Shown piece by piece: positions 36,850 through 52,129 of a stretch of 64,000 bases of DNA; position 1 is the first letter of the stretch; the number at the start of each line of letters is the position of its first letter. The notes beneath the pieces were generated by a model. That model saw only the letters and a list, made by a program, of their open reading frames with translations. It had not been told where the DNA came from and did not search any database. This DNA is from Vitrella brassicaformis CCMP3155 (taxonomy: Eukaryota; Protista; Chromerida): assembly GCA_001179505.1 (NCBI GenBank), contig CDMY01000791.1, positions 124,001 to 188,000 on the forward strand. The letters run 5' to 3'. The translations under genes were made by a program, and so were the position numbers.

Positions 36850-39800
36850 TCACACGGCCGTGGGTTTGTAGCACTTGATGACCCCAGGCTTCGCCCCTGT
36901 GTCCCAGCAGCAGCCCTTGGACTGACACTCCTTACCCCCAATCCCATAAAAACCACAGTCACGCCGCGCGTCCAACTTGGGCTGCACACAGGTGCCTCCG
37001 ACGTGATAGCACCACGGCGAGCTGCCGTCCTCTGTGCGGCTCCAACAACAACCTGACGCACCGCACACCCACAGAGACACGTTAGTTAGTTACACCACAC
37101 ACACCGTGTCTCTGTCTGTCTCTGTGGCTATGCGGTTGTCTCACTCACCGTTGGCGACGCATTCCTGCTCGCGGATGCCCAGGTATCCGCAGTCCCATTT
37201 GTCTGCCTTAGTGGCGGCACACCGCCCGCCGGCTTGTGTCCGCTGGACTGGCACCTCCAGGGGTGATGGCTGCTTGTTCCTCTGCTCCACCTGCACAGGG
37301 GCATAGCACGACGGGGTCTTGGAGAGCTTGGGGGCCGGCCTGAAACAGCACCCTATCGCTGTCCACAGACACACACAGACAGACACAGACAGACAGACAG
37401 ACACACAAGAGCCAGGGAGGTGTTGGGTGAGGTACCAATATGGGGTCGTGTCGGTATCTATAGGTCACACACCTCTGCATTCTTCTGGCGTCATGTTTGG
37501 CCTCACCGGGTCGCACTGCTCGCGCTTGCTAGCGGCGATTTTGCACAGTGCCCCGTTGGAGCCGTGCTTGATCGGCCCTTGGTACCAGGGGCCGGTGTTC
37601 TCTTGGCCGTCGCTTCCCCCACTCCCCTCTCCCCCACTCCCCTCTCCCCCACTCCCTCCCCCGTCCTTACCCTCTCCCTCTTGCTTCCTCTCGGCATGTC
37701 TGTCGCGGCCAGGATCAAAGTGACCGAACTGACTCGCGCTCGCGACCTCTTTCCGTTGGTCGTTTTCGCCGAGAACGGCGAACTCCTCACCGCCCTCCAA
37801 TTGAGCAAACGCCTCGAGTCTCGGCTCATCGGGATCCTGCTGCTGCTGCTGTTCATCTTTGGCTTTGTCGGTTTCTTGGGGGCATTTGAGTGAGGGGATG
37901 GCATCCGACGCCGACAGCTGTTGGCCCTCTTCGTCTTTGGGTACAGCCATGTAGTACTGGCATGTAGCACCTGCCCCGGGCACCCGCAGGCTGTGCTCGA
38001 ACTGCCTCTTGGGGATGCGGGCAATGACGGTGGTGACGCTTGACGGGGAGGGGCCGCGGAGGATCTCCCAAGAAGAATGGACCGTTGCACCGTTCCATGA
38101 GACTGCAGGAGAGACCATGAATGACACCAGAGCATCACATATCTCGTCACGTGTACTGCACGGCTGGCTGTTAGTCGCTGTGTGAGACAGTACAGTGGAG
38201 TGTGGGAGTCTGCGACGGGTTGTCGGTGTCGATGACGAGTGTGGGTTTCCATCTCGGGTGGCCCCGCCAGTTGTTCCTCGGGATCTTCCTTGCCACCTGG
38301 CTGTTAGATCCATCCTCGAAATACATCTCCAGCAGCTTCTCGCCGTCCGACGATACCTCTGTCCAGAATGGCACTGCACCAGGTTCTCCAGTGACCAGCA
38401 GCCCAAAGCCGCCCCAGCAGATGCCTCGGTTGCCGTTCGGTAACCTCTGGACCGACCCGTCACCTGCACACCACACACAAGACAGACCACATCATAGTGA
38501 GTGCCGTTGTGCGCCCGTCCGTGGCCTTTCGCCCGCCCGTTGCTGACCGACCGATAGAGAAGATCTTGGTGTGGTCGTTGAAGTCCCATGTCCTGGTGGC
38601 CACCTGCCGCTTTTCATCGACGTGGTACTCGACCATCCGGGCGTAGAATGGCGGGTGGTGGTTGTTGTTGTCGAGCATCAGGAGGGTGTCGCCCGACACC
38701 ATGTGGGCGTCGTGCTGGCTGCTGAAGGGCCGCTCGTCCTGCAAAATCTGGAACTGGTTGAAGTTGGGGCGCCTCCCCATCGTCCACATGACCTCGGCCG
38801 TGACGCGGCTGACCTGTGTGGGCGCGGGAACAAAGCCAGAGGGGAGAGAGGGGAGGGGGACTTCTGTGTGGGGTGTGGACAGACATGTGTGTAGTGTGTT
38901 GGTCTGCTTGGTCACCTTCATGACGCCTGACAAACAGACAGAGCACGTGAGACATACATACCAGGCTTTCCGTATTCCTCTTCCCTTTGTGTGTCTGTGT
39001 GTGTCTGCACCACCCACCAAGGTGTCTGAACGAGTAGACGTGGTTGCCGTCATCGGTCCAGGAGGCCGCATTGCTGCCATCCCGTCGAAACACAGGCCCG
39101 CCCATCACACAACACAAGAAGCCGATTGTCCGTCCGTCCGTGTGTGCCTATGCATGTGGTCGGTCTCACGGGTGTGTGTAGTCCGCTGCCTCGTGTTTTC
39201 TCCTCTTAATGGAGCTCGCCATGATGTCCTCCACGGACATGTGGTCCCTGACACATACCACCCCCACACACAGACAGAGAGACAGTCTCTGCTGCTGACC
39301 CATCCTTTCCTTTCTCTCTGTCTGTCTGGTGGATGGCCGCACCATTGCCGCCACTCGAACAAGACATTGCCGTCCTGGTCCTGCTCCGTCACGATCGTCG
39401 CCTCGACCTCCTTGGGGTGGCCTCTGTACTGCACCTGCTGACGGTCCGTGTGCACCATCAACGCATAACCTGCCAAGGACAGCACACCAGAGCTCTCAGC
39501 CAAATGGTGCATGTCAGTCAGACGCTCCACATGCCTTGTCCGTTGACCCTGAAGCCGTAACCTGCAACACAATCGACCCATTGTTGAAAGACAAACCATC
39601 CCCTTACTTCGCCCACACTCACCGCTCAGAGCGTAGCCGTGTGGCGGCGGGTACTTCCTCTTGAGCCGGTAGCCGCTGTCCATGACCATGTTGGCTAGGG
39701 CGATCTCGTCAGCATTTGGCGAGAGGCTGAGGTCTGCGAAGGGGTTGTGGCCGTCGGTGTTGATGCCTCCGTCCATGTAGACGACCGGATCGCCACGTAC

Positions 39801-40848
39801 GTCGACCATGAGAAAGTACGGGTGGTGCGTGCCGCCTTTCATCGCCCGCTTGGCCTTCTTGTTGGCCACCATCAGATAGCCCTCAGCCACGCCCCTCTTG
39901 GGCGGCACAGCCAGCCGGATTCTGGGGTACGTCTGCGGCAGACTGACACACACACGCACCATGGCAGGTAGCATGACAACAGCCCGGCCAGCAAGGCCAA
40001 TATATGGTGCGTCTTTCTTGTTGTCTCGCTCATCGGCATCACTCTATCACTTACGTCTTGTAGTTGTGTGTGTGGGGGTGTGCCTCCTGGAGGGTCTTCA
40101 TGAAGGACAGCCCATTCATAAAGGGGTACCGGGGTGCCTTCCGGCCGCGGGGGGACGCATCGCTCCCATTGTGGGGCGCACCCCAGCCCATCAGCTCGTA
40201 GGGCGTCACCAGGCTGCCCTCCCCACTGCCACTTGGCAGCCTGCTGATCTCATTCTCATCCACGAAGTAGCGAGGCTGTCCTTCAGTCACCTCGGCCTTG
40301 ACCAGCTCCTGAGCCGTCATGTTGCCGCCCGAGCGACATGCGCCACGTGGTTGGCAATCATCAGAACTCGCGACCTCTGGCGTGTGTGCGGCAATAGAGA
40401 ACTCCCAAGAGAAGGACAGCACCGTCCGCCCGAGTTGCGTCTGGATGCCGGTGTGGATGTCCACGTGCACATTCTCGCCGGCAGCGAAGGGCTGATCGGG
40501 GTGGAAGACGATTGTGCGGTTGTCGGCGGCGAGGACGGTCCTGCCTTCAGTGCTGCCGGAGGTGTCGCCTCTGACCCTGATTCTGCCCTCGATGGAGTCG
40601 GACCCGATGGGCGCTTCGTAGCGAGCGGCAATCTGCGTGGCTGCGGACACATAGACACCCTCTGGCCGCGGATGGACATACCTGACGAGCACAGCACAGC
40701 ACAGCAATACAATGATGCATTGATTGTCTGCAGAGCTGTGGTGTCTTGGTGTGACTCACTCGAACGGCCCGAATCGGATAGCGCGCGCACAGCAAAAGAA
40801 GAAGAGACAGAGAAGCCACCTCAAAGCCCCATCGTTCCGCCGCATCAT
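36850..40848 (-). CDS. Secreted arylsulfotransferase (ASST beta-propeller) with N-terminal Ig-like (Big_5/SbsA-type) domain and three C-terminal trefoil (P-type) domains
   Basis: Signal peptide MRRNDGALRWLLCLFFFCCARA. Ig-like YVHPRPEG..VSAATQI...TIVFHPDQPFAAGENVHV. ASST motifs LFEW, DYTHP|NAASWTDDGNHVYSFRHL, SQHDAH, GSVQRLPNGN and SWNGAT. Trefoils e.g. RRDCGFYGIGGKECQSKGCCWD...KCY*. Confidence 0.88.
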
Positions 40849-40901
40849 CTCTTCATTTGCAACGGTCCGAAATAATAGTACACACATTGCTGCCTGTCCT
40901 G
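40849..40901. promoter_or_regulatory. 53-nt divergent spacer/bidirectional promoter between arylsulfotransferase and sulfatase
   Basis: Minus-strand ATGs at 40848/40845 and plus-strand ATG at 40902. AT-rich core aaataatagta. A minus-strand uORF ATG AAG AGA TGA overlaps the ASST start. Confidence 0.55.
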
Positions 40902-43900
40902 ATGGACGTGTTGCTCGTGTTGCTCGCGTGCGTGATCCAGCTCATCGTCCTCCAGTCTGTCCGCGGGGCGCCCTCACTTCTGCGGCCGAGCGAGCTGCAA
41001 GATGCAGAAGCACCACTCAACGACCCACAAGACCACCAGGTGAGAGCGGCACACAACACACGAGGCGCACCTATCTGTGCGTCAGGCGATGTTCTCTCTG
41101 CTGGCTGTTGGCAGCATCGTCGTGTGTCCACGAGCGACGACAAAAGCGATAATGGTCCACCGCAGAGCAGCGGCGACCACGGTGGAGGTTATGATAGCGG
41201 CCAGGACACATACGACATCTCAGTTGACGCACGTGTCGAGGCGGCCAAGTCAGGGCCCTCACTGTCAGCCACCAGCCTGCAGTGGGGCGTGAGCGATGCC
41301 GACTGGCGGGACCCCATCACGAGTCAGTTCTCGGCCGAGTGGTCGGCGATAGACGTCGACCCCACCAATTCCACGGGCCTCAAGGCTTGGGGCGTCGACC
41401 CCTCCAGCTCTCAGGACGGCCGACCCAACTTTCTGATCATACTGAGTGACGACCACAGGTGGGATGGGATAGGCAAGGTGCAGCAGCACCTACCTCAAGA
41501 CAAACGGCTCTTCCCATTTATCGTGTAAGGACGGACCGAGACGACAGCAGAGGGAGCCAGGGACGGACAATTGGATGGATCTCTTTGGATGTGTGTGTGT
41601 GTGTGTTGTGTGCAGAGGCAAGACCCCCAACATGGACGACATGATATCCGAGGGCGTCTTCTTCACAAACGCTTTCGTCAGCGACCCCCTCTGCAGCCCC
41701 AGCAAAGGCACACTCTACTCCGGTCGGTAACACACTCACTCCTTCCTCCACCTCCACCACAGCAAGTGTGTCTTAGCTAATTAGACACCAGACCAGATGA
41801 ATGCTCTGCTCTGCTCTGCTCCCTCCATCCATCAGGTGAGCGCGAGCACGTCCATGGTGTGCTGGGAAACGATGACGAGTTCCCCTTGCCCGATGCCGGC
41901 GACGGCATGACACACCTGGGCGACCTCACCATCGCCGAGCGGCTCAGGCGGCAGGGCTACCGCACCGGATACTTCGGCAAGTGGCACATGAAGGAGCAGC
42001 TCGACCGGCCTGGCTTCGAGACGGTCGCCACATTTCGCGGTCAGGGCGACTACTTCAACGGGAACCAGATGTGGGTCAACGGCAAGAAGACTAAGACGAA
42101 CCCCAAGGAGTTCATCGACGACACCGTCACCAACTTCTTCCTCGACTGGCTCAGGGCTAACCAAGACAACCCAAGACCATTCTTCGCCGTGCTCAGCGTC
42201 AAGGTGCACTGGGCGCTCACACATTTCGGCACTGCAATCTCTCTGAGACTCTCTCTCTCTCTGTGTGTGTGTGTGTGTTGGTGATCTGTTTGTCTGTCAT
42301 GGCATGGCAATGGCAGGCCCCGCACACCCCTCGCAGCCCGCATCCCCGGACCAAGGAAATGTTCGTGGGGGGGCTCATGAAGTCGCCGCCCAACTCGAAG
42401 AGCGGCTTCCCCCCTGCGCGCTTCAAGGAGGAGTACTTCGAGTCGGTGGAGACCATCGACATGAACATGGGCCGCGTGCGCAAGGAAATGATGAACATCG
42501 GCATACACGATACAACCATGACATTCTACCTGGGGTGGGTATGGGAATGGGAAGACAGGCATGGGTGCAGGGCAGGCAGTATTACTTGTCTGTGGTCTGT
42601 GGTGTGTGTATGCTCTCAGAGACAATGGGTACTTTCTCGGGTAAAACTTGGTTGGCACCACGCTAGCCGGCATGAGTGTCAGTCATCTTCTGCTGCCTGC
42701 GTTCTTCCTCCCTTGCTTGCAGCGAGCACGGCCTCGTCGACAAGCGCTTCGCCTACGAGGAATCCATCAAGAGTAGGCAGTGTGTACCACGCAGTACCAC
42801 CCACTGCACCGCACCGCCACCACACACACACGCGGTCCTCCACTCGCCTCGCCTCCCCCCTGTCTGTCCGTGTCAGTTCCGCTGATCGTGTCTTATCCGG
42901 GGGGCCGCGTTCGCCGCGACAGTTTCGAGGATGCGTTGGTGCTGCACATGGACATCCCCGCCACCATCATGGATTATGCCGGCCTCAACGGGCGCGACGT
43001 GGTCATGGGGAGGAGCATGCGGCCGCTGCTCGAGACGACCGGCAAGGAGATCTGGCCAGAGGGGGTGCTCATGAACTACTACCCCGAACACAAAATCGGC
43101 CCGCCATTCCAATGGTACCTCCCCTCCCCCGGGCCCTTTCAGCACCACACATGGGTCGGTCTTCTCTGTTCTCTGTCTGTTCCCGTGTTGGCAGGTTTGC
43201 GCTGCGCACCAAGACGGAGAAGCTGATTCACATAGCGCCCACCCTTTACGACCCCTTGTGCGGCGGACCCAGGACCAAGACCCGCTGCATGTACCTCAAG
43301 GGCCGGGAGGAGTTCTACAACATCAAGAACGACCCCTACGAGCTGCACGACCTCACCAAAACCAAAACCAGCAGCGGGGCGCAGGACACAATCGCCAGAA
43401 TGAAGAAGCAGCTCAACATCGTGCTTCTGCGCGAGGGGGTGGCCACCGCCATGCCGTTCTTCAGGGACACGCCTGTCGGCTTCCCCTACCCCAAATCAAT
43501 GTTCTTCTGGACATTCGGTGAGAGAAGACTAATTGGCGTCAAGACAAGAGCCGGTGGTCACATGTATTGTCTCTCGCTCCGTGTGCGTGTGTGAGTGCAG
43601 AAGGGCAGTCGACGGCCGATAAGCGGAAGCAGAACCGGTTGTCGCTCAAGGGCGGTGCCTATTTGTCAGCGCTGGACAAGAGGGCGCCTTTGGATGGTGT
43701 GCTGGTGTTGCCGCGCGGTGGCTGGGCGGACATCAGCCACGCCCACTTCACCAAGCGGACGGACGGCCGGACGGTGTCCATGTGGGTCAAGGCAGAACAG
43801 GGGCCGATGGAGGAGGCACAAGTGCTCTATGACGAGGTGGGTGGACGCACAGTGACCTCAGCTGATGGACGAGACGAGCCACAGGTGGATTGTGGTATGC

Positions 43901-45477
43901 TCGTGTGTCAGGGCAACGACTATGCTGGCGCTGCGTTGCGTCTGAAGGACAGCAAAATGGAGGGGATCATTCGCATGAATGGCCACACACTCAGGGTGGC
44001 CAAGCGATTCACACACCAGGTGGGGTGGGCACGGCACGCACAGAGACAGTCAGGGGGCCCGGACCTGCACCGGGACTGTGTGTCCGTGCCGTGTGTGGGA
44101 TCCATTAGAGCTGGGCGCATGTGGCCCTGCAGTACGGCGACTCGGAGGCCTGTCTCTTCCTGGACGGCCTCAAGATGGCCTGCCAGGCGGCGGGGGGCAG
44201 CAAGCAGAAACAGCCCAAGACACCAACCAACAACCCCAAAGGCAAGACACCGACCAACAACCCCAAGGGCAAGCAGAAGAAAGGCAAACGCCCCAAGAGA
44301 AAGGCAAAGGCCAGCAAGGCAAAGGCCACCAAGAAGCGAAGGAGACAACGACAGCAGCAGCAGCAACAGCAGCGACAGCAACAGCAACAACAGCGGCATG
44401 CCGATACGGTATACTTCGACGTCCCACCCCTTCCACAGCCCCACACTTCCAAGGTGGAGAAGCTAGACATCTCGCCCCCCATCACACTCGCCGTCACTGA
44501 GCCGCCAGCGGTGGATAGCCCCTCGGCTGACCTCACAGACGTGCTCCTGGACAGCAACCACAGCAGCTACAGCAGCTACGATGTGGACGACTCAGCCATG
44601 ACGATGAAGGGCACCACAATTGCGGGCCAGGCTGCCCTCGGCGCGTCGGTCGGCGGCTCGTCCTTCGGCGACCACAACAATCGCGAGTCCGACTTTTTCA
44701 CAGGGCAAATGGATGAAGTGCGTGTGTACGGCAGCTACAACGCCCCGTCTGAGGCGAACCTGGCTGCGATGGGGGGCGTGGTGGGTCGGTGGAAGATGGA
44801 CAGGGACGCCAAGGACGTGTCGGGGTTCACAGACGGGCAGGGCAAGGACTGGCACTTCGACACCAACAGGAAACAGGGCAACGGAGCTGTCAAGTGAGTG
44901 AGGACGGACGAATACATACACGCACACCGCACCGCACACGTGGCCTCCTCGTCCTGTCCGTATGTGATGCAGAATGGACGGCAGCGGTGAGTCCATTCGG
45001 CTCAAGTCCGACATTCTCAGTCGTGGCTTCACCTCCCTGACGGTGTGTGCCTGGGTGGAGCCTGCGTCCGGAACCAACGGCCGGCGCATCATCTACGAGC
45101 AGGGCGGCAAGAGGACCGGCTTCGCACTCAGACACCAAGGCGACGAGCTCCAGGCGGCCTTCGTCTCGCGTGGCGACCGGCAGATCGTTAAGGCGTCGCC
45201 GCTCCCAGACGGCCAGTGGACGCACGTGTGCTGCACCTTCGACAAGGGCAACGTGGCGCTCTACATGAATGGCCAAGAGAGGGCTGCCGAGAGCATCAAG
45301 CTCAAGTCGCTGCCGCACCACTCTGAGATGGCGTGTGCGATTGGGGAGAGCATGGGCACCAACGCCTTCGGGGAAAGGCCGTCGGGGAACTTCATGGGGT
45401 CCATTGATGACGTCATTGTGTGGGACCAGCCGCTGGGGAGGCGGCAGATCATCGACCTGCACAACAACCTCACATAA
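40902..45477 (+). CDS. Secreted formylglycine-type (S1) sulfatase, GlcNAc-6-sulfatase/mucin-desulfating-like, fused to two LamG (concanavalin-like) domains
   Basis: Signal peptide. RPNFLIILSDDHRWD, TPNMD..SEGVFFTNAFVSDPLCSPSKG, GYRTGYFGKWH, PFFAVLSVK|APHTP, GDNG..|EHGLVDKRFAYEESI|VPLIVSYP, EFYNIKNDPYELHDL. In-phase splice (TFG|EGQS) joins to LamG domains TVSMWVK...GQMDEVRVY and LTVCAWV...WTHVCCTF...GSIDDVIVWD. Confidence 0.93.
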
Positions 45478-46087
45478 TGGATGGGGGCAATCTCCCCCCC
45501 TCTGTCTTGTTTGTTGAGGTTTTTCAACAGCTGCATTGATTGCATCGCTGGTGACTTTCGCTCGTGTATAGGTGGGTAGAGCTGCTTCACTCTTGGGGCG
45601 CCTGTGGGCTTCGATTATTTGTCGGCCTACTTGTGTCTCGCCGCCCCTTTGGCCCATCTGTCTGTACTATCAATGAGTATCTAGTTGAGTAGCCTGTCTG
45701 TCTGTCTCTCTGTACTTGGGGGGTGGAGGGGGCGTCGTAGCAATTAAACGGTCCACACACACTGTTACAGAGATGCGATGCTACCGTGTGCTGTCTGTCG
45801 TGTGGGTGTGGGTGTGCCCTCCCCGTCCCCACTGACATCTATCGCTCACTCTTGCATGCTTCTTACCGCCAGACTGTGACAGTATTGACCCGTCCATCAC
45901 GTGGCACGATTGATCATGGGCCCAAGACACACACATGGATGGCTTCACTCACCACTCACACGCACATATGCATGCCTACGTACGTCAGTCACATCATTCA
46001 TTGTCCTAGTGCCCCTGGCCAATATATGGATGTCACACCCACACAACACGCTCACATACAATGCATGCAATGTGTCTGTCACTCAAC

Positions 46088-49000
46088 TCACGTGTACCGC
46101 CTCCCCGACACGACCCCCCTCTTGTGCACCGGTAGACTCTCGTTGTCGGCGTATTTGGCCTTCTTGAGCCAACATGTCAGCCGATCTGTCGATGCCTTGT
46201 TGGTATAGTGCGACCAGTATCTGCATGTGGGGTGGCTCTGGCAGAGGGACTGACACGCCAGGTGGGAGCTGATGTGGGCGATAGGCGTGCCCGGCAGCGA
46301 CTCGCCAGTGTACTCCACGTCCACGTCATAGCCCCCTAAGGCACGCGCACACACACACACGTGGAGAGAGAGAGAGAGAGAGAGAGACATGCATTGAGAT
46401 CTCTCTCGCTTTGTTTGTGTCGTCTCTTCGTCTGTCTCACCACATGCCTTTGGCCCGGTGACATATCCCTGTGCGTCAATCCCCTCTGTCTTCGTTTTCT
46501 GATGCCGCGCCCGCTTCAAGTAACACGCATACGCCCTCCCCTCCTCAATGCTGTCGCGGAGACCACTCTCGGCCGCATCACTGCTGGTCGTTTGCTCTTC
46601 TGTCTCCCCCACATACACAAACCCATTGCAGTTGACGCTGGCCTGACATAGCTCCTGACACACCAGCGGGGCGTCGATCAACACCTGCTGCCCGTTCTTC
46701 GGATGTGGGGCGAGCCGGGTGGAAGCCACCGGCATGTGTGGAAGGCTCTCCCCCTCACAGAATGCGTTGCTTTCCATACACTCGCACAGTCGTGGCCCGG
46801 AAACGACGTGGGCCTCCGGCTCCAGCACTGCTGGGCTGTGGCCTGCCTTCAGGACACATCTGAAGTCCTTTTCGTGCCATGAGAAACCGCCGCAGCCCGT
46901 GGTGTGCTGGCAGCGATATTGGCATAGTATGGCGGACATGATGCCCTCCTCTGGTGGGACGCGCTGCAGGTCCCGTGTGTTGGTCGTCTCGGGGAGCATG
47001 CAGCTGTGGTCCTCACGCGTGTAGGCCGGCAAGCTGCTAAAGCTCCGCTTGGCATCGCCTGCACACAAAAGGTACATATAAGAGACAGACAAGAGAGCAC
47101 CTGCGCATCCATTCATTCACTCAGACGTGCGCTCACCGCCTCCTGGCATGATCGCCCCCTGCCACACCTCCACCTCGCACAGCGACAAGATCCGCTGAGG
47201 AACATCCGCTGCGGCCTTGAGCACAAGCCACACATATTCGCCCTTAGGTAGGTTGTCACACGTCAGCTGGGTCCATTCGCTTGGTGGAATATCTCTTAGC
47301 TCAACTTCTGGCTCGCACTCTGTCAGATTGGCCTCCCCGAACCTCTCATCATCACTCTCGCCTACGAAGACTCTGATGTCCTCTGCACACACGCACAATT
47401 GGGGGTCGCTTCTCCAAGCAATTGTCTCCAAGGATCCGTCATTGTGTATCACCTAGCAATGAAGCACGTTTCGGAGCCAGGAAGCGGACAGCCCCGATCG
47501 AAAAGGGATGTGTAAGGGCTATGCGCAGCCACGGCTGGGGGGATGGCGGCGTCTGGCTGCCTGGCAATAGAGACACGTAGCGAAACAGAGACGATGAGGA
47601 TCATGTCTCACTTCTTTACATTTGGATGGATCGGGTGTGCCGTCGACAGCGGGGGACGCCGGCTGGCTGCCGCTGCCGCTGCCGCCATCGGGGTGCTGCT
47701 TGACAGGCCGGTGGAGCGCCAGGTTGGGCGGCGCCACCCTCAGTCTCTGCCTCATCTCTGTCTTCATCGCCTCCAAAGCCCTCTCGTCAAATCCCCACAC
47801 AGCCACCTCACACAGCGTCATGACGGCGTGTGGCGCAAACGGCAGCACCACCCACACGTATCGGCCTGTGGGGTACAGCACGTCCGTCACCCAGCCATAG
47901 TCCACGACTTTCTGGCATTCGATGGTCGTGGTGCCTCCGGCCATCCACTTGTTCATGCCGCCGCCGGGAGGGATGCAGGGTAGGTTTCCTGCTGCTCGAT
48001 AGGCGCCGGGGTCGTTGCCTACCCAGACTTGGAGGCCGACCAGTCTCTTTAAAGAAACACGCCGAACACTGGACCCTTGTCCTCTTGTAGGTCCACCCTC
48101 CACCACGGCAACTGCACGTGTGAAAGACAGACAGACAGCGAGAGAGATGCCGCATGTCGAAACCAAGGAAGATTGCCTGGCCCACCCATCCTTGGCCTCC
48201 CTGCGTCCTGGCACATTTGGCCGTGAGAGGGTTGCTGTCGACGTCGCCGTCCACAGCCAACTTGGACTCATGCCCGGACACCGTCGAGCTCTGCTCCGTG
48301 GGCTTGTTGACGGCCAGATTGAACCGGGCGTAGTCGGTGGACGGCGGCTCGTTTCCCGCCTCCACCGATATCTTCTCCCCCTGCTCCTCCTCGGGCTCTG
48401 CCGGCGTGCCTCCCAGCCATGGATGGAATCGCCTCCACCCGAAAATTTTTGCAGGCCTGTCTCGTTCGCGGATGCTAGGGCCACCGGGAGGACCGAATCC
48501 CCCAATACCGGAGGGACCGAATCCCCCAATACCGGAGGGACCGAATCCCCCAATACCGGAGAATTTTTTGCCGAAATCGGGTCCCATGATGGTGCCGGTG
48601 CGAGAGGCGAAGAGAGGCATCAGAGAGGGCAGCGAGAAGCGAGGATACCAAGTGGATGACGCGTTGGGCGGGACATGCAGTTTGTAGCCGGGGTACCACT
48701 GGCGAGGAGGCTCCGGGGGGACGGGCGGGGGCAGCTTGATGGCTGTGGAGTGGTTCCTTATAGCCGTTGCGTTGGGCTGGGTCGTGACAGGCACTCCCAG
48801 CCGGTCGTAGATTTCCTTAATCTCTGGCGGAGTCCTTGGCGGCACATCTGGCAGCCACTGTGGCAGTGTTTCCAGGATGCCCGGCATGATCTCCCGCAGC
48901 AGAGGGCACCCGCACTCGTAGCCAACCATCATGTACTTGGGTTTTCCCTCGCAGGGCGGCATACTTGGGTGTGTCGGGGAGATGCGCTTCAAGTCACACT

Positions 49001-50506
49001 GTGTTCGGTTGTCGCAGTAGGGGCTGATCCGGTCGGTGTGGTCGACCACTGAGCACTCGCTCTCACCCATTTGCACGTGGCGGCATGCGTACGGCAGATT
49101 GGGACTGCGGCCGTAACCCACGTACCGCACCATCAGGACCTGCATGACACACATACACACACTCGCAGGCAGCTCTCATGACGCACAAAACACCCGCACC
49201 TTGCCCATTTCGCAGGAGATGATTGCCTCGCTGTCCTCGTCGCAAAAGATTGACCAGCTAACGGCGGATGGGAGCAGGTAGTCGTCTGAACACCTCGGCA
49301 GAGGGTTCGGGGCGTCGGGCGGGGGAGCGATGCCCACCTTGCTGAGAGGAATGTCATCGGCTACACCACAGTGGCATAAGCGCCACACGCGTAGGTAGGC
49401 ACCTGCACAGGCAGACAGACAGACAGAGACACGAGCCAACGAATGACATAGACAGACACAGGGAGGCAGAAGTAGGAATGGAATAGAATGGAATGGAATG
49501 GGGTGCGGTGGGATGGTTGATGCATCGATGCATGCGTGCTGTATTATGTCATCCATCACCGACCCGTGCACGTGCTCTCTTCGGCGAGCGCGTCACTCAC
49601 GTCTGTGGACACATACACACACATACACACAAACATTCCATCCCCCGTGGATGGCATACATATTGAATACTTGCTGCACGTGTCCCTGACTGTCAGTCTC
49701 TTTGTCTCTCTGCCAGCCATCGATCCCTTCGTCCAGCAATTAAGCTTACAGACGTCACATTGCCTCTGTCCGTTGCATCTCTCCTGCAGCAGCCTGGTGA
49801 CGTCGTGGCTGCAGTCGGTCGTCACGGGCGATGGCCGACACATTAGCTCACCCCCCGCCGTGCGACCATACACTGCGAAGAGGATGTACAGCCCCTTGTT
49901 GGGCGGGCAGAACAGAAAGTCCCGCTCCCCGTCACAGATAAACTGCAGACCGACCGAGTCGTAGCACCCAGGAAAGGTTGACGCTGACGACGAGCTGGAA
50001 CTTCCAATCGACACACCGCCAAAAGCGTCCACAAACGCAGACGCAGGCCCCACTGCCGCTCTCCCAGTCTGATTATTGCCGCGGGGAGGGACCGATAGGA
50101 TAAGAAAGCTCCCCCACACATCATCGCGATTCGCGGCTCGTCCACCGTGCCAGTCAGACACATGGGCGTCAAAGCGATTCAGCGCCTCCTGCAATGAGTT
50201 GTTTGTCGTCTTGGACGTGGCATTGAGCGACGGCTGCAGCGCTTTCAACGCCTTCCGCTCCCGGCCGCGACACTGCAACCCGACACATTCCCAAACCCGA
50301 GAGGACCGCCCTCGGGTGACGCCAGTGAGGACGGCAGAGAGGCTGATGCAGGCGGCGGCAAAGACGAAAGATGACCGTGATGACCGTCTTCGGCGCCGAC
50401 GGGTGTGGGTGTCATGATCCTCACTCTCAAACTGCACCGGGGCGGACCAGTTGGCGGAGCAAAATGAGGACGAAAGCCTTGTTTGTCGTTGCCATGATCG
50501 CATCAT
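46088..50506 (-). CDS. Type-II-anchored multi-lectin adhesin: 2 SUEL/Gal-lectin, 2 F-type (FTP/discoidin-like) and 3 PAN/apple domains; reading-frame break near 48050
   Basis: Basic run plus hydrophobic anchor. SUEL: ICDGE..FLFCP...ILFAVYGR...CNGQRQCDV. FTP: NLAVNKPTEQSS...LAVDG...PWWRVDL...GRYVWV...MTLCEVAVWG. Apple: LCQYRCQHTTGCGGFSW...CVLK...VSGP, CQELCQASVNCNGFVY and CQSLCQSHPTCRYWSH...CWLK. Confidence 0.85.
48492..48561 (-). repeat. 24-bp coding tandem repeat x3 (GIGGFGPS/P)
   Basis: accgaatcccccaataccggaggg repeated back-to-back with no spacers. Confidence 0.95.
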
Positions 50507-52129
50507 TGCTGCCTCACGGAACTGCTGAGAAGGATCTTCCGTCCTCAGCTTCATTGAGACGTGAGACGCCACCCCCAGAGTCTTGTTAAGGGGGCCGATC
50601 GAACGCACACATCATTCCACGCGACGCACTCGTCAAAAATCAATGACATGAATGACACAGCGCTCGCCACACACACTCCACTTTCCTCCCTAGCTGCACA
50701 CACTCCATTGACCCGCAATGACAGACAGCATTAGCAACACACGCGCAACCAACCGGGGGACTGCAGAGTGATGCTTCCGTCTGCCTGCCTGCCTGGGCGT
50801 GTCCGTCGTAGGCGGGCAGCATGCGTGAGCAAAAGCGGTCAGATACATCGAATCAATAATTGAGCATCAGACAGCCAGCCAGCCATCAGCAGCAGGAAGA
50901 TCTCCGTACACAAACACATACATACATACACGCAGGCATGCACGCACGCGTGGCAGGGCCAACTCTGTCTCTCCAAGTAAAAATCATCACGTCCGTCACG
51001 TCGGCACAAAGGCCAAGTAAATTATAATGATGTCCGTCGTGAGCGGGCATGCAACAAGAGCAACGATGGACGAAAAGGGAAAACATATGTGCACTCACTC
51101 ACTCACCTGAAGTGACGACTCTCGTGGGTATGCATAAACGCCATACATTCCCTCACAGACCTCTCGGCACCGTCATTCTCTCATATGACACGCACCGAAT
51201 ACACCCCACCCCACCGCAACCCGTTGACTTGCACTGCAGCAGCTCTCTCCCCTCGCCGGCCTCTCCGCTCCGCTCGTCCCATACACAAATGTATATACAC
51301 ACGGACACACGGACAGACACCTGCCCCCCCTCCTCTCTCTGTACACACGACACTTGCCTGATCATATATCCGAGACGCCTTCATTGGTATACGTGTGGCG
51401 CGCATGTGATATGCAGAGACAGACAGACAGACAGACATCCGTGTAGGGTCGGATGGATCCAGATGGATGCAGCGGACAAACATCAGCAGGGAGCAGGCAA
51501 GGATGAGAAAGACATGTGTATCGACACACACACACACACACCTCTCACACGTATACAGACAGACATCGGACAAGAGGAAGGACAGCTCAGGGACTAGGGC
51601 AACAGAGAAAAGAGTGACATCCATCGGATGAATCAATCGGCGAGTGGGAGAGCGTGCGTGTTGAGCGAGTGAGTAAACTACATCGGCTTAGATATCAGGA
51701 TAGCTAGCTACAGGTAGACAGCCCCCATCGATGGGTGACTTCAACAAAACGACCCTGCTCTCTCTCTCCCCTGTTGCTTTTTGTGTACACAGCTACAGCA
51801 GCATCCGTATCGATACCCTCATGAGTGGTGAGTGAGTGACTCAGATCATCATCTCTCCAGGATTCCCCCCCCGCCCGCTCCAATGCAGACAAAAATCGTG
51901 ACCACTCGCAGCAAGCAAGCCATCCAGACAGACAGAACGTGACATCAGCCGATCAAGCATCACAAAATTGAAGAATACACACATACCCACACACATATAC
52001 GGGCAGACAGACAGACAGACAGACAGCCAGAGAGAGGAACACAGACGGGTAGAGATACATGCGCCAGAAGTAGAGGTAGGCAGGGCTCGCGGCCATCATA
52101 CACATCGATCGATCGATCGACCGACGTTC

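What the first reader, a model, noticed from the sequence alone, without database searches (positions are those of the whole stretch)
36850..50506. Candidate extracellular sulfated-glycan remodelling system: arylsulfotransferase and sulfatase head-to-head (53 nt apart), flanked by a multi-lectin adhesin
Seen: two secreted enzymes with opposite sulfate-ester chemistry, an ASST-family transferase and an S1 sulfatase, start 53 nt apart on opposite strands. This is the shortest divergent spacer in the window (the other five are 175 to about 400 nt). Each carries glycan-binding-type modules (3 trefoils; 2 LamG), and the next gene is a SUEL/F-lectin/PAN surface protein. Established: ASSTs move sulfate from aryl donors without PAPS; S1 sulfatases of this type remove sulfate from GlcNAc/mucins; vertebrate trefoil factors are mucin-binding lectins. 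Inference: a co-regulated 'writer/eraser' or sulfate-scavenging unit acting on sulfated mucus or cell-wall polysaccharide. This would suit a coral-associated chromerid. I know of no such cluster described in alveolates.
Basis: partly seen in the sequence, partly recalled or inferred. Interest (0 to 1): 0.88.

Follow-up and report, generated by a model that had tools for sequence, protein, structure and literature searches.

The report
Head-to-head arylsulfotransferase and sulfatase genes
Two real, expressed genes for secreted sulfate-ester enzymes of the alga Vitrella brassicaformis do start 53 bases apart on opposite strands, but nothing tested here shows that they work together as one system.

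Summary
An ASST-family gene lies on the minus strand (CDS 40848 to 36850: signal peptide, Ig-like domain, ASST propeller, 3 trefoils). An S1 sulfatase gene lies on the plus strand (CDS 40902 to 45477: signal peptide, catalytic domain, 2 LamG). Their ATGs are exactly 53 nt apart. The public Vitrella annotation agrees, and spliced contigs from one RNA-derived run cover both genes.

The "writer/eraser system" reading is not supported by any test I could run.
- No sulfatase lies within 10 kb of 82 bacterial ASST homologues.
- No sulfatase lies in the loci of four other Vitrella ASST paralogues (six further paralogues seen).
- Vitrella is compact. The published median gene distance is 92 bp, and ten divergent pairs seen here span 56-653 nt.
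- Both enzymes deviate at conserved catalytic positions. The ASST has Tyr where E. coli ASST has His252, a position that is His in 164 of 171 relatives. The sulfatase has C-S-P-S-K instead of C-x-P-x-R.

TSSs and co-expression remain unmeasured. The F-lectin module is unconfirmed. The scan has already noted the same ASST gene, and other ASST and sulfatase head-to-head pairs, elsewhere in this genome.

The parts
36850..40848 (-). ASST-like gene CDS (13 exons, 969 aa including the first Met, stop at 36850-36852). Exons: 40848-40760, 40681-40055, 39942-39623, 39561-39535, 39469-39343, 39247-39170, 39073-39018, 38926-38916, 38813-38552, 38463-38194, 38102-37473, 37358-37149, 37052-36850.
   Evidence: Spliced RNA contig, record 9 of run X5. 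The frame is open through all joints. The annotated protein P0001 is identical except for a retained 102-nt intron and a start at the second Met.
40780..40848 (-). Signal-peptide-like N-terminus of the ASST protein (about 23 aa, hydrophobic core, ends A-R-A). The Ig-like domain follows directly.
   Evidence: Read from the translation. No signal-peptide predictor was available.
40396..40677 (-). Bacterial Ig-like (Big_5) domain.
   Evidence: Pfam PF13205, 25.6 bits against a cut-off of 23.6 on the exon. The same N-terminal module occurs in bacterial homologues P0003 and P0004.
37906..39899 (-). ASST-family catalytic (beta-propeller) region, aa 254-688. Equivalents of the E. coli ASST active-site residues: His252 -> Tyr347 (39557-39559), His356 -> His422 (39172-39174), Asn358 -> Asn424 (39070-39072), Arg374 -> Arg439 (39025-39027), sulfo-carrier His436 -> His479 (38712-38714).
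   Evidence: Pfam PF05935 and PF14269. PDB 9KF4 at E 4e-22. Profile mapping onto 3ELQ. Column counts. Coordinates.
36853..37518 (-). Low-complexity linker end plus three trefoil (P-type) domains. The first two are each split by an intron.
   Evidence: Pfam PF00088, 3 stretches, E 8e-25. PDB spasmolytic polypeptide and TFF1/TFF3 hits.
40849..40901 (.). 53-nt spacer between the two start codons. It must hold both core promoters, or the two 5' ends overlap. It contains an upstream ATG for the ASST mRNA at 40854-40856 (a 3-codon uORF overlapping the start).
   Evidence: Sequence. The ASST RNA contig appears to reach about 40853-40858, inferred from record length and the depth bins. The central 22-mer of the spacer was not found in public metagenome/transcriptome contigs.
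40902..45477 (+). S1 sulfatase gene CDS (12 exons, 1193 aa, stop at 45475-45477). Exons: 40902-41039, 41115-41524, 41616-41722, 41836-42203, 42317-42534, 42620-42640, 42723-42772, 42877-43114, 43195-43517, 43601-44019, 44109-44893, 44973-45477.
   Evidence: Spliced RNA contig, record 10 of run X5, for exons 1-9. The last two introns were set by GT-AG plus frame. The annotated gene has the same CDS ends, with a 1168-aa product.
40902..40967 (+). Signal-peptide-like N-terminus of the sulfatase (22 aa), followed by an acidic low-complexity stretch of about 125 aa.
   Evidence: Read from the translation. No predictor was available.
41418..43504 (+). Sulfatase catalytic domain (aa 148-620). Asp158/Asp159 (41448-41453); formylglycine motif C209-S-P-S-K213 (41692-41706) with Lys in place of the motif's Arg; Lys267/His269 (41979-41987); His344; Asp415/Asn416; Lys428.
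   Evidence: Pfam Sulfatase and SGSH_C. PDB alignments show Lys aligned to the motif Arg and G-K-W-H conserved. Coordinates.
43603..45474 (+). Two LamG-like (Laminin_G_3) modules. The first (43603-44891) is interrupted by a K/Q-rich low-complexity insert of about 150 aa. The second (44974-45474) is intact.
   Evidence: Pfam PF13385 at 1.1e-24 (second) and 5.7e-5 (C-terminal part of the first). The two halves of the first align to the second.
46088..50554 (-). Neighbouring lectin/adhesion gene or genes. Annotated as two genes: SUEL-lectin protein (687 aa, 48049-50554) and PAN-domain protein (518 aa, 46088-47956).
   Evidence: Gene calls. Pfam SUEL_Lectin x2, PAN_1 and PAN_4. F-lectin not detected.

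Best explanation
This is a divergent pair of two separately built genes for secreted, lectin-module-bearing sulfate-ester enzymes in the compact nuclear genome of Vitrella brassicaformis.

What is shown:
- Both genes are transcribed and spliced in the same RNA-derived run.
- Their start codons are 53 nt apart, so they must use one very short bidirectional promoter region or have overlapping 5' ends.
- The minus-strand protein is a bacterial-type Ig-like + ASST propeller enzyme. It belongs to a family with at least 7 full-length members seen in Vitrella and an orthologue in Piridium. In this copy the family domain is fused to three trefoil domains.
- The plus-strand protein is an S1 sulfatase whose nearest solved relatives are S1_11 GlcNAc-6-O-sulfatases. 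It is fused to two LamG modules.

What is inferred:
- Each enzyme is delivered to the cell surface or extracellular matrix and held on glycans by its binding modules.
- The sulfatase hydrolyses 6-O-sulfate from GlcNAc-type residues, provided its Cys209 is converted to formylglycine despite the Lys213 variant.
- The ASST domain transfers sulfuryl groups through a sulfo-His479 intermediate, with His422 as acid/base partner. Its third active-site histidine is replaced by Tyr347, so its properties may be altered.
- The close spacing most likely reflects genome compaction. At most it gives shared basal transcription. It does not mark a dedicated, conserved two-enzyme system.
For: Gene structure, expression and the spacer:
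-.

Family assignments:
-.
- PMC13524802 gives the S1_11 identities of 9S8Y and 7P24.

Evidence against a dedicated system:
- There were 0 sulfatase hits at E<=1 in 82 bacterial ASST-homologue loci (1.36 Mb), with a working positive control on the window.
- There was no sulfatase in the loci of Vitrella paralogues P0009, P0018, P0089 and P0051. Instead two of these form divergent ASST-ASST pairs.

Compaction:
- The median distance between Vitrella genes is 92 bp (PMC4501334).
- Divergent CDS spacers in loci seen here run continuously from 56 to 653 nt (n=10).

Family history:
- The Vitrella paralogues and Piridium P0129 form one clade nested among bacterial and metagenome sequences (FastTree; identities).

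Catalytic core:
- The two-histidine mechanism for ASSTs comes from bioRxiv 10.64898/2026.10.08.757636.
- The active-site residue list comes from PMC13426309.
Against: - Under random gene order, an ASST gene sitting immediately next to a sulfatase gene is nominally unlikely. The expected count is 2 x 7 x S / 22,817, about 0.002-0.02 for S = 3-30 sulfatase genes (my calculation; S is not known). Adjacency is therefore some evidence for a link, although the pair was picked post hoc from a large scan.
- 53 nt is the smallest of the divergent spacers I could see.
- Both proteins carry glycan-binding modules, and the next gene is a lectin/adhesion protein. This fits a common extracellular glycan theme.
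- An ASST-type enzyme that sulfates a sugar hydroxyl is known (Cpz4, PMC13426309), so glycan sulfation by the ASST is chemically credible.
- TSSs and expression correlation were not measured.
Confidence: 0.6

Rival explanations
1. The pair is a co-regulated functional unit driven by one bidirectional promoter. The trefoil-anchored ASST adds, and the LamG-anchored sulfatase removes or recycles, sulfate esters on the same extracellular mucus or cell-wall glycan.
For: - Divergent ATGs lie 53 nt apart.
- Both transcripts are present in the same RNA run.
- Both enzymes are secretory-type with carbohydrate-binding modules.
- The sulfatase is closest to S1_11 6S-GlcNAc sulfatases.
- Cpz4 shows that ASST-type enzymes can sulfate sugar hydroxyls.
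- Chance adjacency is nominally unlikely (my calculation).
Against: - No conserved linkage in 82 bacterial loci or in the four other Vitrella ASST paralogue loci.
- The genome is compact, with many short spacers.
- ASSTs need an aryl-sulfate donor, and none is evident. Their physiological substrates are generally unknown (PMC13426309).
- Tyr replaces the His252-equivalent, and Lys replaces the motif Arg in the sulfatase.
- Expression depths differ between runs: X5 gives 45 against 101, X6 gives 15 against 2-5. This is too little to judge correlation.
Confidence: 0.2
2. One or both proteins are catalytically impaired. They act mainly as glycan-binding or structural matrix proteins (pseudo-enzymes), so no sulfate chemistry links them.
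For: - The ASST has Tyr347 at a position that is His in 164 of 171 aligned family members. That includes its Piridium orthologue and the other Vitrella paralogues sampled.
- The sulfatase has C-S-P-S-K where the family-defining core motif is C-x-[P/A]-x-R.
- Both carry several binding modules and long low-complexity linkers.
Against: - The sulfo-carrier His, its proposed acid/base partner His, and the Asn and Arg are all kept in the ASST.
- All other sulfatase catalytic and metal residues are kept, and Lys is a conservative replacement.
- Both genes are intact, spliced and expressed.
Confidence: 0.15
3. The 53-nt spacing is an artefact of wrong start-codon choice. The true start of one gene lies elsewhere, for example in an upstream exon, and the real spacing is much larger.
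For: The sulfatase RNA contig in run X5 starts at about 40987 and does not reach the ATG at 40902. No public transcript containing the spacer or the start of sulfatase exon 2 was found.
Against: - Both first ATGs open directly into signal-peptide-like sequences.
- The first splice joint of the sulfatase (41039/41115) is RNA-supported and in frame with the 40902 ATG.
- No in-frame ATG downstream of 40902 would keep the Asp-Asp catalytic motif.
- The ASST contig appears to run through its ATG to about 40853-40858.
- The independent public annotation uses the same starts.
Confidence: 0.05

Closest known systems
Bacterial PAPS-independent arylsulfate sulfotransferases (E. coli CFT073 AssT, PDB 3ELQ; Desulfitobacterium hafniense ASST; PDB 9KF4 'Sulfotransferase')
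   Same: - Same Pfam families (PF05935, PF14269).
- An N-terminal Ig-like/beta-sandwich domain followed by the propeller domain.
- Conserved H-x-N, S-x-R-H and Q-H-D motifs, giving the equivalents of His356, Asn358, Arg374 and the sulfo-carrier His436.
   Different: - It is eukaryotic, intron-rich (12 introns) and carries a signal peptide.
- Three trefoil domains are fused at the C-terminus.
- The His252-equivalent is Tyr.
- It is only about 30-40% identical to its nearest bacterial relatives (Chloroflexota, Ignavibacteria and others).
- No activity data exist.
Cpz4 of the caprazamycin pathway (Streptomyces), an ASST-type enzyme that sulfates a sugar hydroxyl
   Same: It is a precedent for an ASST-family enzyme acting on a glycoside hydroxyl rather than a phenol (PMC13426309).
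   Different: Cpz4 is an intracellular, pathway-embedded enzyme with a dedicated aryl-sulfate donor supply. Here no donor-making genes are evident next to the gene. Sequence relationship to Cpz4 was not tested.
S1_11 carbohydrate sulfatases: Amuc1074 (9S8Y), BT3177 (7P24) and BT4656 (5G2V), all 6S-GlcNAc sulfatases
   Same: They are the best PDB matches of the catalytic exons. They share the Sulfatase + SGSH_C domain layout and the conserved Asp-Asp, G-K-W-H and Asp-Asn motifs.
   Different: - The motif Arg is replaced by Lys (C-S-P-S-K).
- There is an acidic N-terminal extension of about 125 aa.
- Two LamG modules sit at the C-terminus.
- It is a eukaryotic gene with 11 introns.
- Subfamily membership was judged from single exons only.
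Vertebrate trefoil factors (TFF1-3, spasmolytic polypeptide)
   Same: The three C-terminal domains match the P-type domain (Pfam E 8e-25) and solved TFF structures.
   Different: They are fused to an enzyme in an alga. Glycan specificity is unknown.
Bidirectional (head-to-head) gene pairs in compact eukaryotic genomes
   Same: Divergent orientation with a very short shared upstream region, and both genes expressed.
   Different: No evidence yet of a shared regulatory element or of correlated expression. In Vitrella, short spacing is the genomic norm (median 92 bp between genes, PMC4501334).

Membership tests
PAPS-independent arylsulfate sulfotransferase (ASST; Pfam PF05935/PF14269) | Domain match above the curated threshold | tested here: met
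   PF05935 at 53.4 bits (cut-off 24.2) and PF14269 at 36.9 bits (cut-off 27) on P0001.
PAPS-independent arylsulfate sulfotransferase (ASST; Pfam PF05935/PF14269) | Sequence similarity to solved ASST-type structures | tested here: met
   9KF4 at E 4e-22 with the single protein. The family profile A1 hits 9KF4 at 1.6e-86 and E. coli AssT 3ELQ at 1.3e-19.
PAPS-independent arylsulfate sulfotransferase (ASST; Pfam PF05935/PF14269) | Sulfo-carrier histidine (E. coli His436) in the Q-H-D motif | tested here: met
   His479 in S-S-Q-H-D-A. The column is His in 186 of 190 aligned sequences.
PAPS-independent arylsulfate sulfotransferase (ASST; Pfam PF05935/PF14269) | His356 / Asn358 / Arg374 equivalents | tested here: met
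   His422, Asn424 and Arg439.
PAPS-independent arylsulfate sulfotransferase (ASST; Pfam PF05935/PF14269) | His252 equivalent (third active-site histidine, D-x-H motif) | tested here: not met
   Tyr347 in L-S-G-Y-G-F. The column is His in 164 of 171 aligned sequences. The Piridium orthologue and the Vitrella paralogues P0009, P0018, P0051 and P0089 keep His.
PAPS-independent arylsulfate sulfotransferase (ASST; Pfam PF05935/PF14269) | Sulfuryl transfer from aryl sulfate donors (ping-pong, sulfo-His intermediate) | not testable with these tools
   This needs a recombinant enzyme assay.
S1 formylglycine-dependent sulfatase | Sulfatase domain match above the curated threshold | tested here: met
   PF00884 at 36 bits (cut-off 25) on a single exon, and PF16347 SGSH_C at 38.4 bits (cut-off 29.3). 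The annotated product carries both.
S1 formylglycine-dependent sulfatase | Core maturation motif C/S-x-P/A-x-R | tested here: not met
   The motif reads C-S-P-S-K. Cys and Pro are present, and Lys213 aligns with the motif Arg in all three PDB alignments printed. The motif definition comes from PMC2459300. The RNA contigs show no sequence difference from the genome in this stretch.
S1 formylglycine-dependent sulfatase | Metal-binding and catalytic residues (Asp-Asp, Lys/His, His, Asp-Asn, Lys) | tested here: met
   Asp158/Asp159, Lys267/His269, His344, Asp415/Asn416 and Lys428 were read from the model. G-K-W-H aligns with 9S8Y. The assignment of the other residues rests on established motif knowledge.
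S1 formylglycine-dependent sulfatase | A formylglycine-generating enzyme in the same organism | not tested
   No FGE query sequence was available by reference, and the window holds none.
SulfAtlas subfamily S1_11 (6S-GlcNAc sulfatases) | Closest relatives are S1_11 members | tested here: inconclusive
   The top exon-level PDB hits are S1_11 enzymes: 9S8Y at 5.5e-12, 7P24, and 5G2V at 3.4e-5. Other subfamilies follow closely, for example 7LHA at 1.4e-9. No full-length subfamily phylogeny was done.
Trefoil (P-type) domain | Pfam match with the cysteine pattern, three copies | tested here: met
   PF00088, 3 stretches, 86.9 bits. TFF/PSP PDB hits.
LamG / concanavalin-A-like lectin module | Pfam match, two copies | tested here: met
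   The second copy gives PF13385 at 87.8 bits. The first copy matches only in part (23.7 bits against 27.6), but both of its halves align to the second copy around a low-complexity insert.
Co-regulated bidirectional gene pair / functional gene cluster | Divergent orientation with a short shared upstream region, both genes expressed | tested here: met
   53 nt between the ATGs. Spliced contigs of both genes occur in run X5.
Co-regulated bidirectional gene pair / functional gene cluster | Linkage conserved in relatives or paralogues | tested here: not met
   0 of 82 bacterial ASST loci and 0 of 4 other Vitrella ASST paralogue loci hold a sulfatase. Chromera and Piridium genomes were not available to test.
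Co-regulated bidirectional gene pair / functional gene cluster | Correlated expression across conditions; mapped TSSs | not testable with these tools
   Only one read-laying run was allowed, and the runs are held as unstranded assembled contigs.

The most novel reading that the evidence does not exclude
The pair is the first eukaryotic extracellular, PAPS-independent sulfation/desulfation module. A trefoil-tethered ASST uses environmental or self-made aryl sulfates to sulfate surface or mucus glycans. A LamG-tethered GlcNAc-6-sulfatase, transcribed from the same 53-nt bidirectional promoter, edits or recycles those esters. This would give a chromerid a way to remodel its own sulfated glycans, or those of its coral host, outside the cell.
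Probability: 0.1. Interest if true: 0.75.

Novelty: new variant of a known kind. Interest (0 to 1): 0.4.

Why it matters
ASST-type sulfotransferases are treated as bacterial enzymes with unknown natural roles. Here one sits in a chromerid nuclear genome. It is intron-rich, expressed, and fused to trefoil domains. It belongs to an expanded family that also has a member in Piridium.

If these proteins are active outside the cell, they would point to PAPS-independent sulfation in a eukaryote. They would also offer candidate tools that come with built-in glycan-binding modules.

The specific claim of a two-enzyme "system" would matter for algal-coral surface glycobiology, but it currently rests on adjacency alone. 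The practical value of this check is threefold:
- It gives corrected gene models.
- It identifies two catalytic-site deviations that any functional work must address.
- It shows that linkage is not a general property of the family.

Tried and rejected
1. Public transcripts carrying the spacer or the sulfatase 5' end. An exact 22-mer from the spacer and a 24-mer from the start of sulfatase exon 2 gave no match in metagenome/transcriptome contigs.
2. Run X7 (labelled RNA?) holds nothing of the region.
3. F-lectin module in the neighbouring gene. There is no Pfam hit, even at E<=10, on the three candidate exon stretches. It rests on motif-level resemblance only.
4. NCBIfam gave no family for P0001 or for the sulfatase exons.
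5. Literature look-ups for PDB codes 9KF4 and 7EBP found nothing usable. I therefore cite 9KF4 only by its deposited name, 'Sulfotransferase'.
6. The word-indexed protein search with P0001 returned few hits. The exhaustive HMMER search was used for the family survey instead.
7. I could not obtain a protein id for the annotated 1168-aa sulfatase.
8. I considered a bacterial operon co-transfer origin for the pair and rejected it, because there is no ASST-sulfatase neighbourhood in the 82 bacterial loci.
9. P0002 (a 6711-aa titin-like butterfly protein, 26 matched stretches) was excluded from the alignments as an unrelated repetitive hit.

Full report
**What is there.**
The window is GC-rich eukaryotic DNA with short GT-AG introns. 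An exact protein look-up places it on contig CDMY01000791.1 of Vitrella brassicaformis CCMP3155 (GCA_001179505.1).

I laid public runs on 37600-43590. Run X5 gives spliced contigs with 15 canonical joints, so it is RNA-derived. One contig of 2292 nt (depth 45) covers the minus-strand gene. One contig of 5745 nt (depth 101) covers the plus-strand gene.

From those joints, and from GT-AG plus frame for the parts outside the laid stretch, I built two full models:
- An ASST-like CDS of 13 exons (40848 to 36850, 969 aa).
- A sulfatase CDS of 12 exons (40902 to 45477, 1193 aa).

The bases between the two ATGs are 40849-40901, exactly 53 nt. The public annotation has the same two divergent genes 56 nt apart, because it starts the ASST at its second Met.

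**Domains.**
The annotated ASST protein is P0001 (1002 aa). It carries Trefoil x3 (E 8e-25), Arylsulfotrans (53.4 bits), Arylsulfotran_2 and Big_5.

P0001 differs from my RNA-based model by a retained 102-nt in-frame intron. The spliced form aligns with bacterial homologues without an insertion.

The sulfatase exons give Sulfatase, SGSH_C and Laminin_G_3. The second LamG is strong. The first is split by a K/Q-rich insert of about 150 aa, but both of its halves align to the second.

Both proteins begin with a hydrophobic, signal-peptide-like segment (read from the sequence).

The neighbouring minus-strand gene or genes carry two SUEL lectin domains and PAN domains. The annotation splits this region into two genes.

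**Catalytic sites.**
A review of bacterial ASSTs lists the E. coli active site as His252, His356, Asn358, Arg374 and Thr501, with His436 as the sulfo-carrier (PMC13426309). A profile of 20 family members aligned to 3ELQ maps those residues onto conserved motifs.

The Vitrella protein keeps four of them: His422, Asn424, Arg439 and His479. At the His252 position it has Tyr347. That column is His in 164 of 171 aligned relatives. These include the Piridium orthologue and four other Vitrella paralogues.

A recent preprint on the Desulfitobacterium enzyme proposes a two-histidine mechanism: a carrier His plus an acid/base His, with a third His nearby. By order and spacing, the third His corresponds to His252. 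That correspondence is my inference. If it holds, the catalytic core is intact and the substitution may tune rather than abolish activity.

In the sulfatase the maturation motif reads C-S-P-S-K. Lys213 aligns with the Arg of the family-defining C-x-[P/A]-x-R core (motif from PMC2459300). The other catalytic and metal-binding residues are present. Whether Cys209 is converted to formylglycine is unknown.

**Sulfatase type.**
The best solved matches of the catalytic exons are 9S8Y, 7P24 and 5G2V. A 2026 paper identifies 9S8Y as Amuc1074 and 7P24 as BT3177. Both are S1_11 6S-GlcNAc sulfatases (PMC13524802). 5G2V is deposited as an N-acetylglucosamine-6-sulfatase.

The margin over other subfamilies is modest, and it was measured on single exons.

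**Is the pairing meaningful?**
I tested linkage in three ways.

1. Bacterial relatives.
   - A scan of 185,579 species genomes with the family alignment returned 80 loci, mostly Chloroflexota, Ignavibacteria and Bacteroidota.
   - I added two more bacterial loci.
   - tblastn with the sulfatase catalytic domain found no hit at E<=1 in all 82 loci (1.36 Mb). The same query hit the window strongly as a control.
2. Vitrella paralogues.
   - Vitrella holds at least seven full-length ASST paralogues: P0001, P0009, P0018, P0089 and its 702-aa neighbour, and P0051 and its 727-aa neighbour, which has a weak Trefoil match.
   - None of the four other loci (82 kb) contains a sulfatase.
   - Two of them are divergent ASST-ASST pairs with spacers of 312 and 388 nt.
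3. Spacing.
   - The genome paper reports a median of 92 bp between protein-coding genes in Vitrella (PMC4501334).
   - The ten annotated divergent CDS spacers I saw are 56, 123, 207, 287, 293, 312, 388, 447, 514 and 653 nt.
   - 53-56 nt is therefore the low end of a continuous range, not an outlier class.

In favour of a link, immediate adjacency of one of about 7 ASST genes to a sulfatase is nominally improbable under random gene order. The expected count is about 0.002-0.02 for 3-30 sulfatase genes (my calculation). However, the pair was selected post hoc from a scan of many windows. Scan notes also list other head-to-head pairs in this genome: sulfatase with a peptidase, sulfatase with a xylanase, and several ASST fusions (unverified).

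**Expression and starts.**
- The ASST contig has 96 letters beyond 40679. With the 78-nt first intron, this puts its 5' end at about 40853-40858, a few bases upstream of the ATG. I inferred this from record length and the depth bins, because that joint was not printed.
- The sulfatase contig begins at about 40987 and does not reach the ATG at 40902.
- The first sulfatase joint (41039/41115) is in frame with that ATG, which opens a signal peptide. No in-frame ATG downstream of 40902 would keep the Asp-Asp motif.
- TSSs are therefore not mapped, but a kb-scale widening of the spacer is unlikely.
- Depths in three runs are X5: 45 against 101; X6: 15 against 2-5; X7: none. These are too few to judge co-expression.

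**Origin.**
In a FastTree of 139 family members, the Vitrella paralogues and Piridium sociabile P0129 form one clade among bacterial and metagenome sequences. P0129 is sister to this gene.

The family therefore predates the Vitrella-Piridium split, and it duplicated within the lineage. This copy then gained trefoils and lost the third histidine.

**Verdict.**
- The sequence observation is correct and precise.
- The domain and family assignments are right, apart from the unconfirmed F-lectin module.
- The "writer/eraser system" remains a hypothesis. It has some circumstantial appeal, but there is no conserved linkage, two catalytic-site caveats, and a genomic background in which tight head-to-head spacing is ordinary.
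- I rate the compact-genome neighbour explanation at about 0.6 and true functional coupling at about 0.2.

Noticed in passing
window 38814-38926: The public gene model P0001 reads through a 102-nt in-frame intron (38814-38915), adding 34 aa inside the propeller. The RNA contig splices it out and uses an 11-nt micro-exon (38916-38926). The spliced form aligns with homologues without an insertion.
   Followed up: yes
window 39470-39534: One intron of the ASST gene has GC-AG ends instead of GT-AG. It is supported by the RNA contig joint, which the tool reported as non-canonical with 3 ambiguous letters.
   Followed up: partly
window 40845-40856: An upstream ATG at 40854-40856 (minus strand) opens a 3-codon uORF whose stop overlaps the ASST start codons. 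It lies inside the 53-nt spacer and is present in the mRNA only if the TSS is upstream of it.
   Followed up: no
window 46088-50554: The annotation splits the lectin/adhesion region into two genes 92 nt apart (687 aa with SUEL, 518 aa with PAN). The second gene's start (M-N-K-W..., 47956) falls in the middle of one continuous open frame that looks like a single domain.
   Followed up: partly
window 44190-44560: A lysine- and glutamine-rich low-complexity insert of about 150 aa, with repeated P-T-N-N-P-K-G-K units and poly-Q, interrupts the first LamG module of the sulfatase. The annotated product is 25 aa shorter than my model, so an extra intron may lie here.
   Followed up: no
window 45478-46700 (approx.): The sulfatase RNA contig (5745 nt) is about 2.2 kb longer than the CDS it covers. 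It probably runs on into the convergent PAN-domain gene, which ends 611 nt downstream. This suggests overlapping or abutting 3' ends in an unstranded assembly.
   Followed up: no
L088:6645-12790 and L090:5966-12575: Two other Vitrella loci carry divergent ASST-ASST gene pairs (spacers 312 and 388 nt). One partner (727 aa) also has a weak Trefoil match. The ASST family is expanded in this genome and repeatedly fused to adhesion-type modules.
   Followed up: partly
L087 and L089 (Logan contigs of ERR558152): RNA-assembly contigs bridge divergent neighbouring genes (an ASST and its upstream neighbour). Continuous RNA coverage across head-to-head intergenic regions seems common in Vitrella. No such bridge was seen for the ASST-sulfatase pair in run X5.
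   Followed up: no
P0129 (EukProt EP00745, Piridium sociabile): The non-photosynthetic chrompodellid Piridium has an orthologue of this ASST (684 aa, no trefoils) that keeps the histidine lost in Vitrella.
   Followed up: partly
L004:15825-16622: The closest bacterial homologue, P0003 (a tandem double-ASST protein of 1453 aa), lies about 1.5 kb from a TauE-type sulfite-exporter-family gene. No sulfatase is nearby.
   Followed up: no
P0002: A 6711-aa 'titin-like' protein of the butterfly Vanessa tameamea matched the 87-aa ASST exon in 26 stretches (E 1e-40). It is probably a repetitive-sequence artefact and was left unexplained.
   Followed up: no
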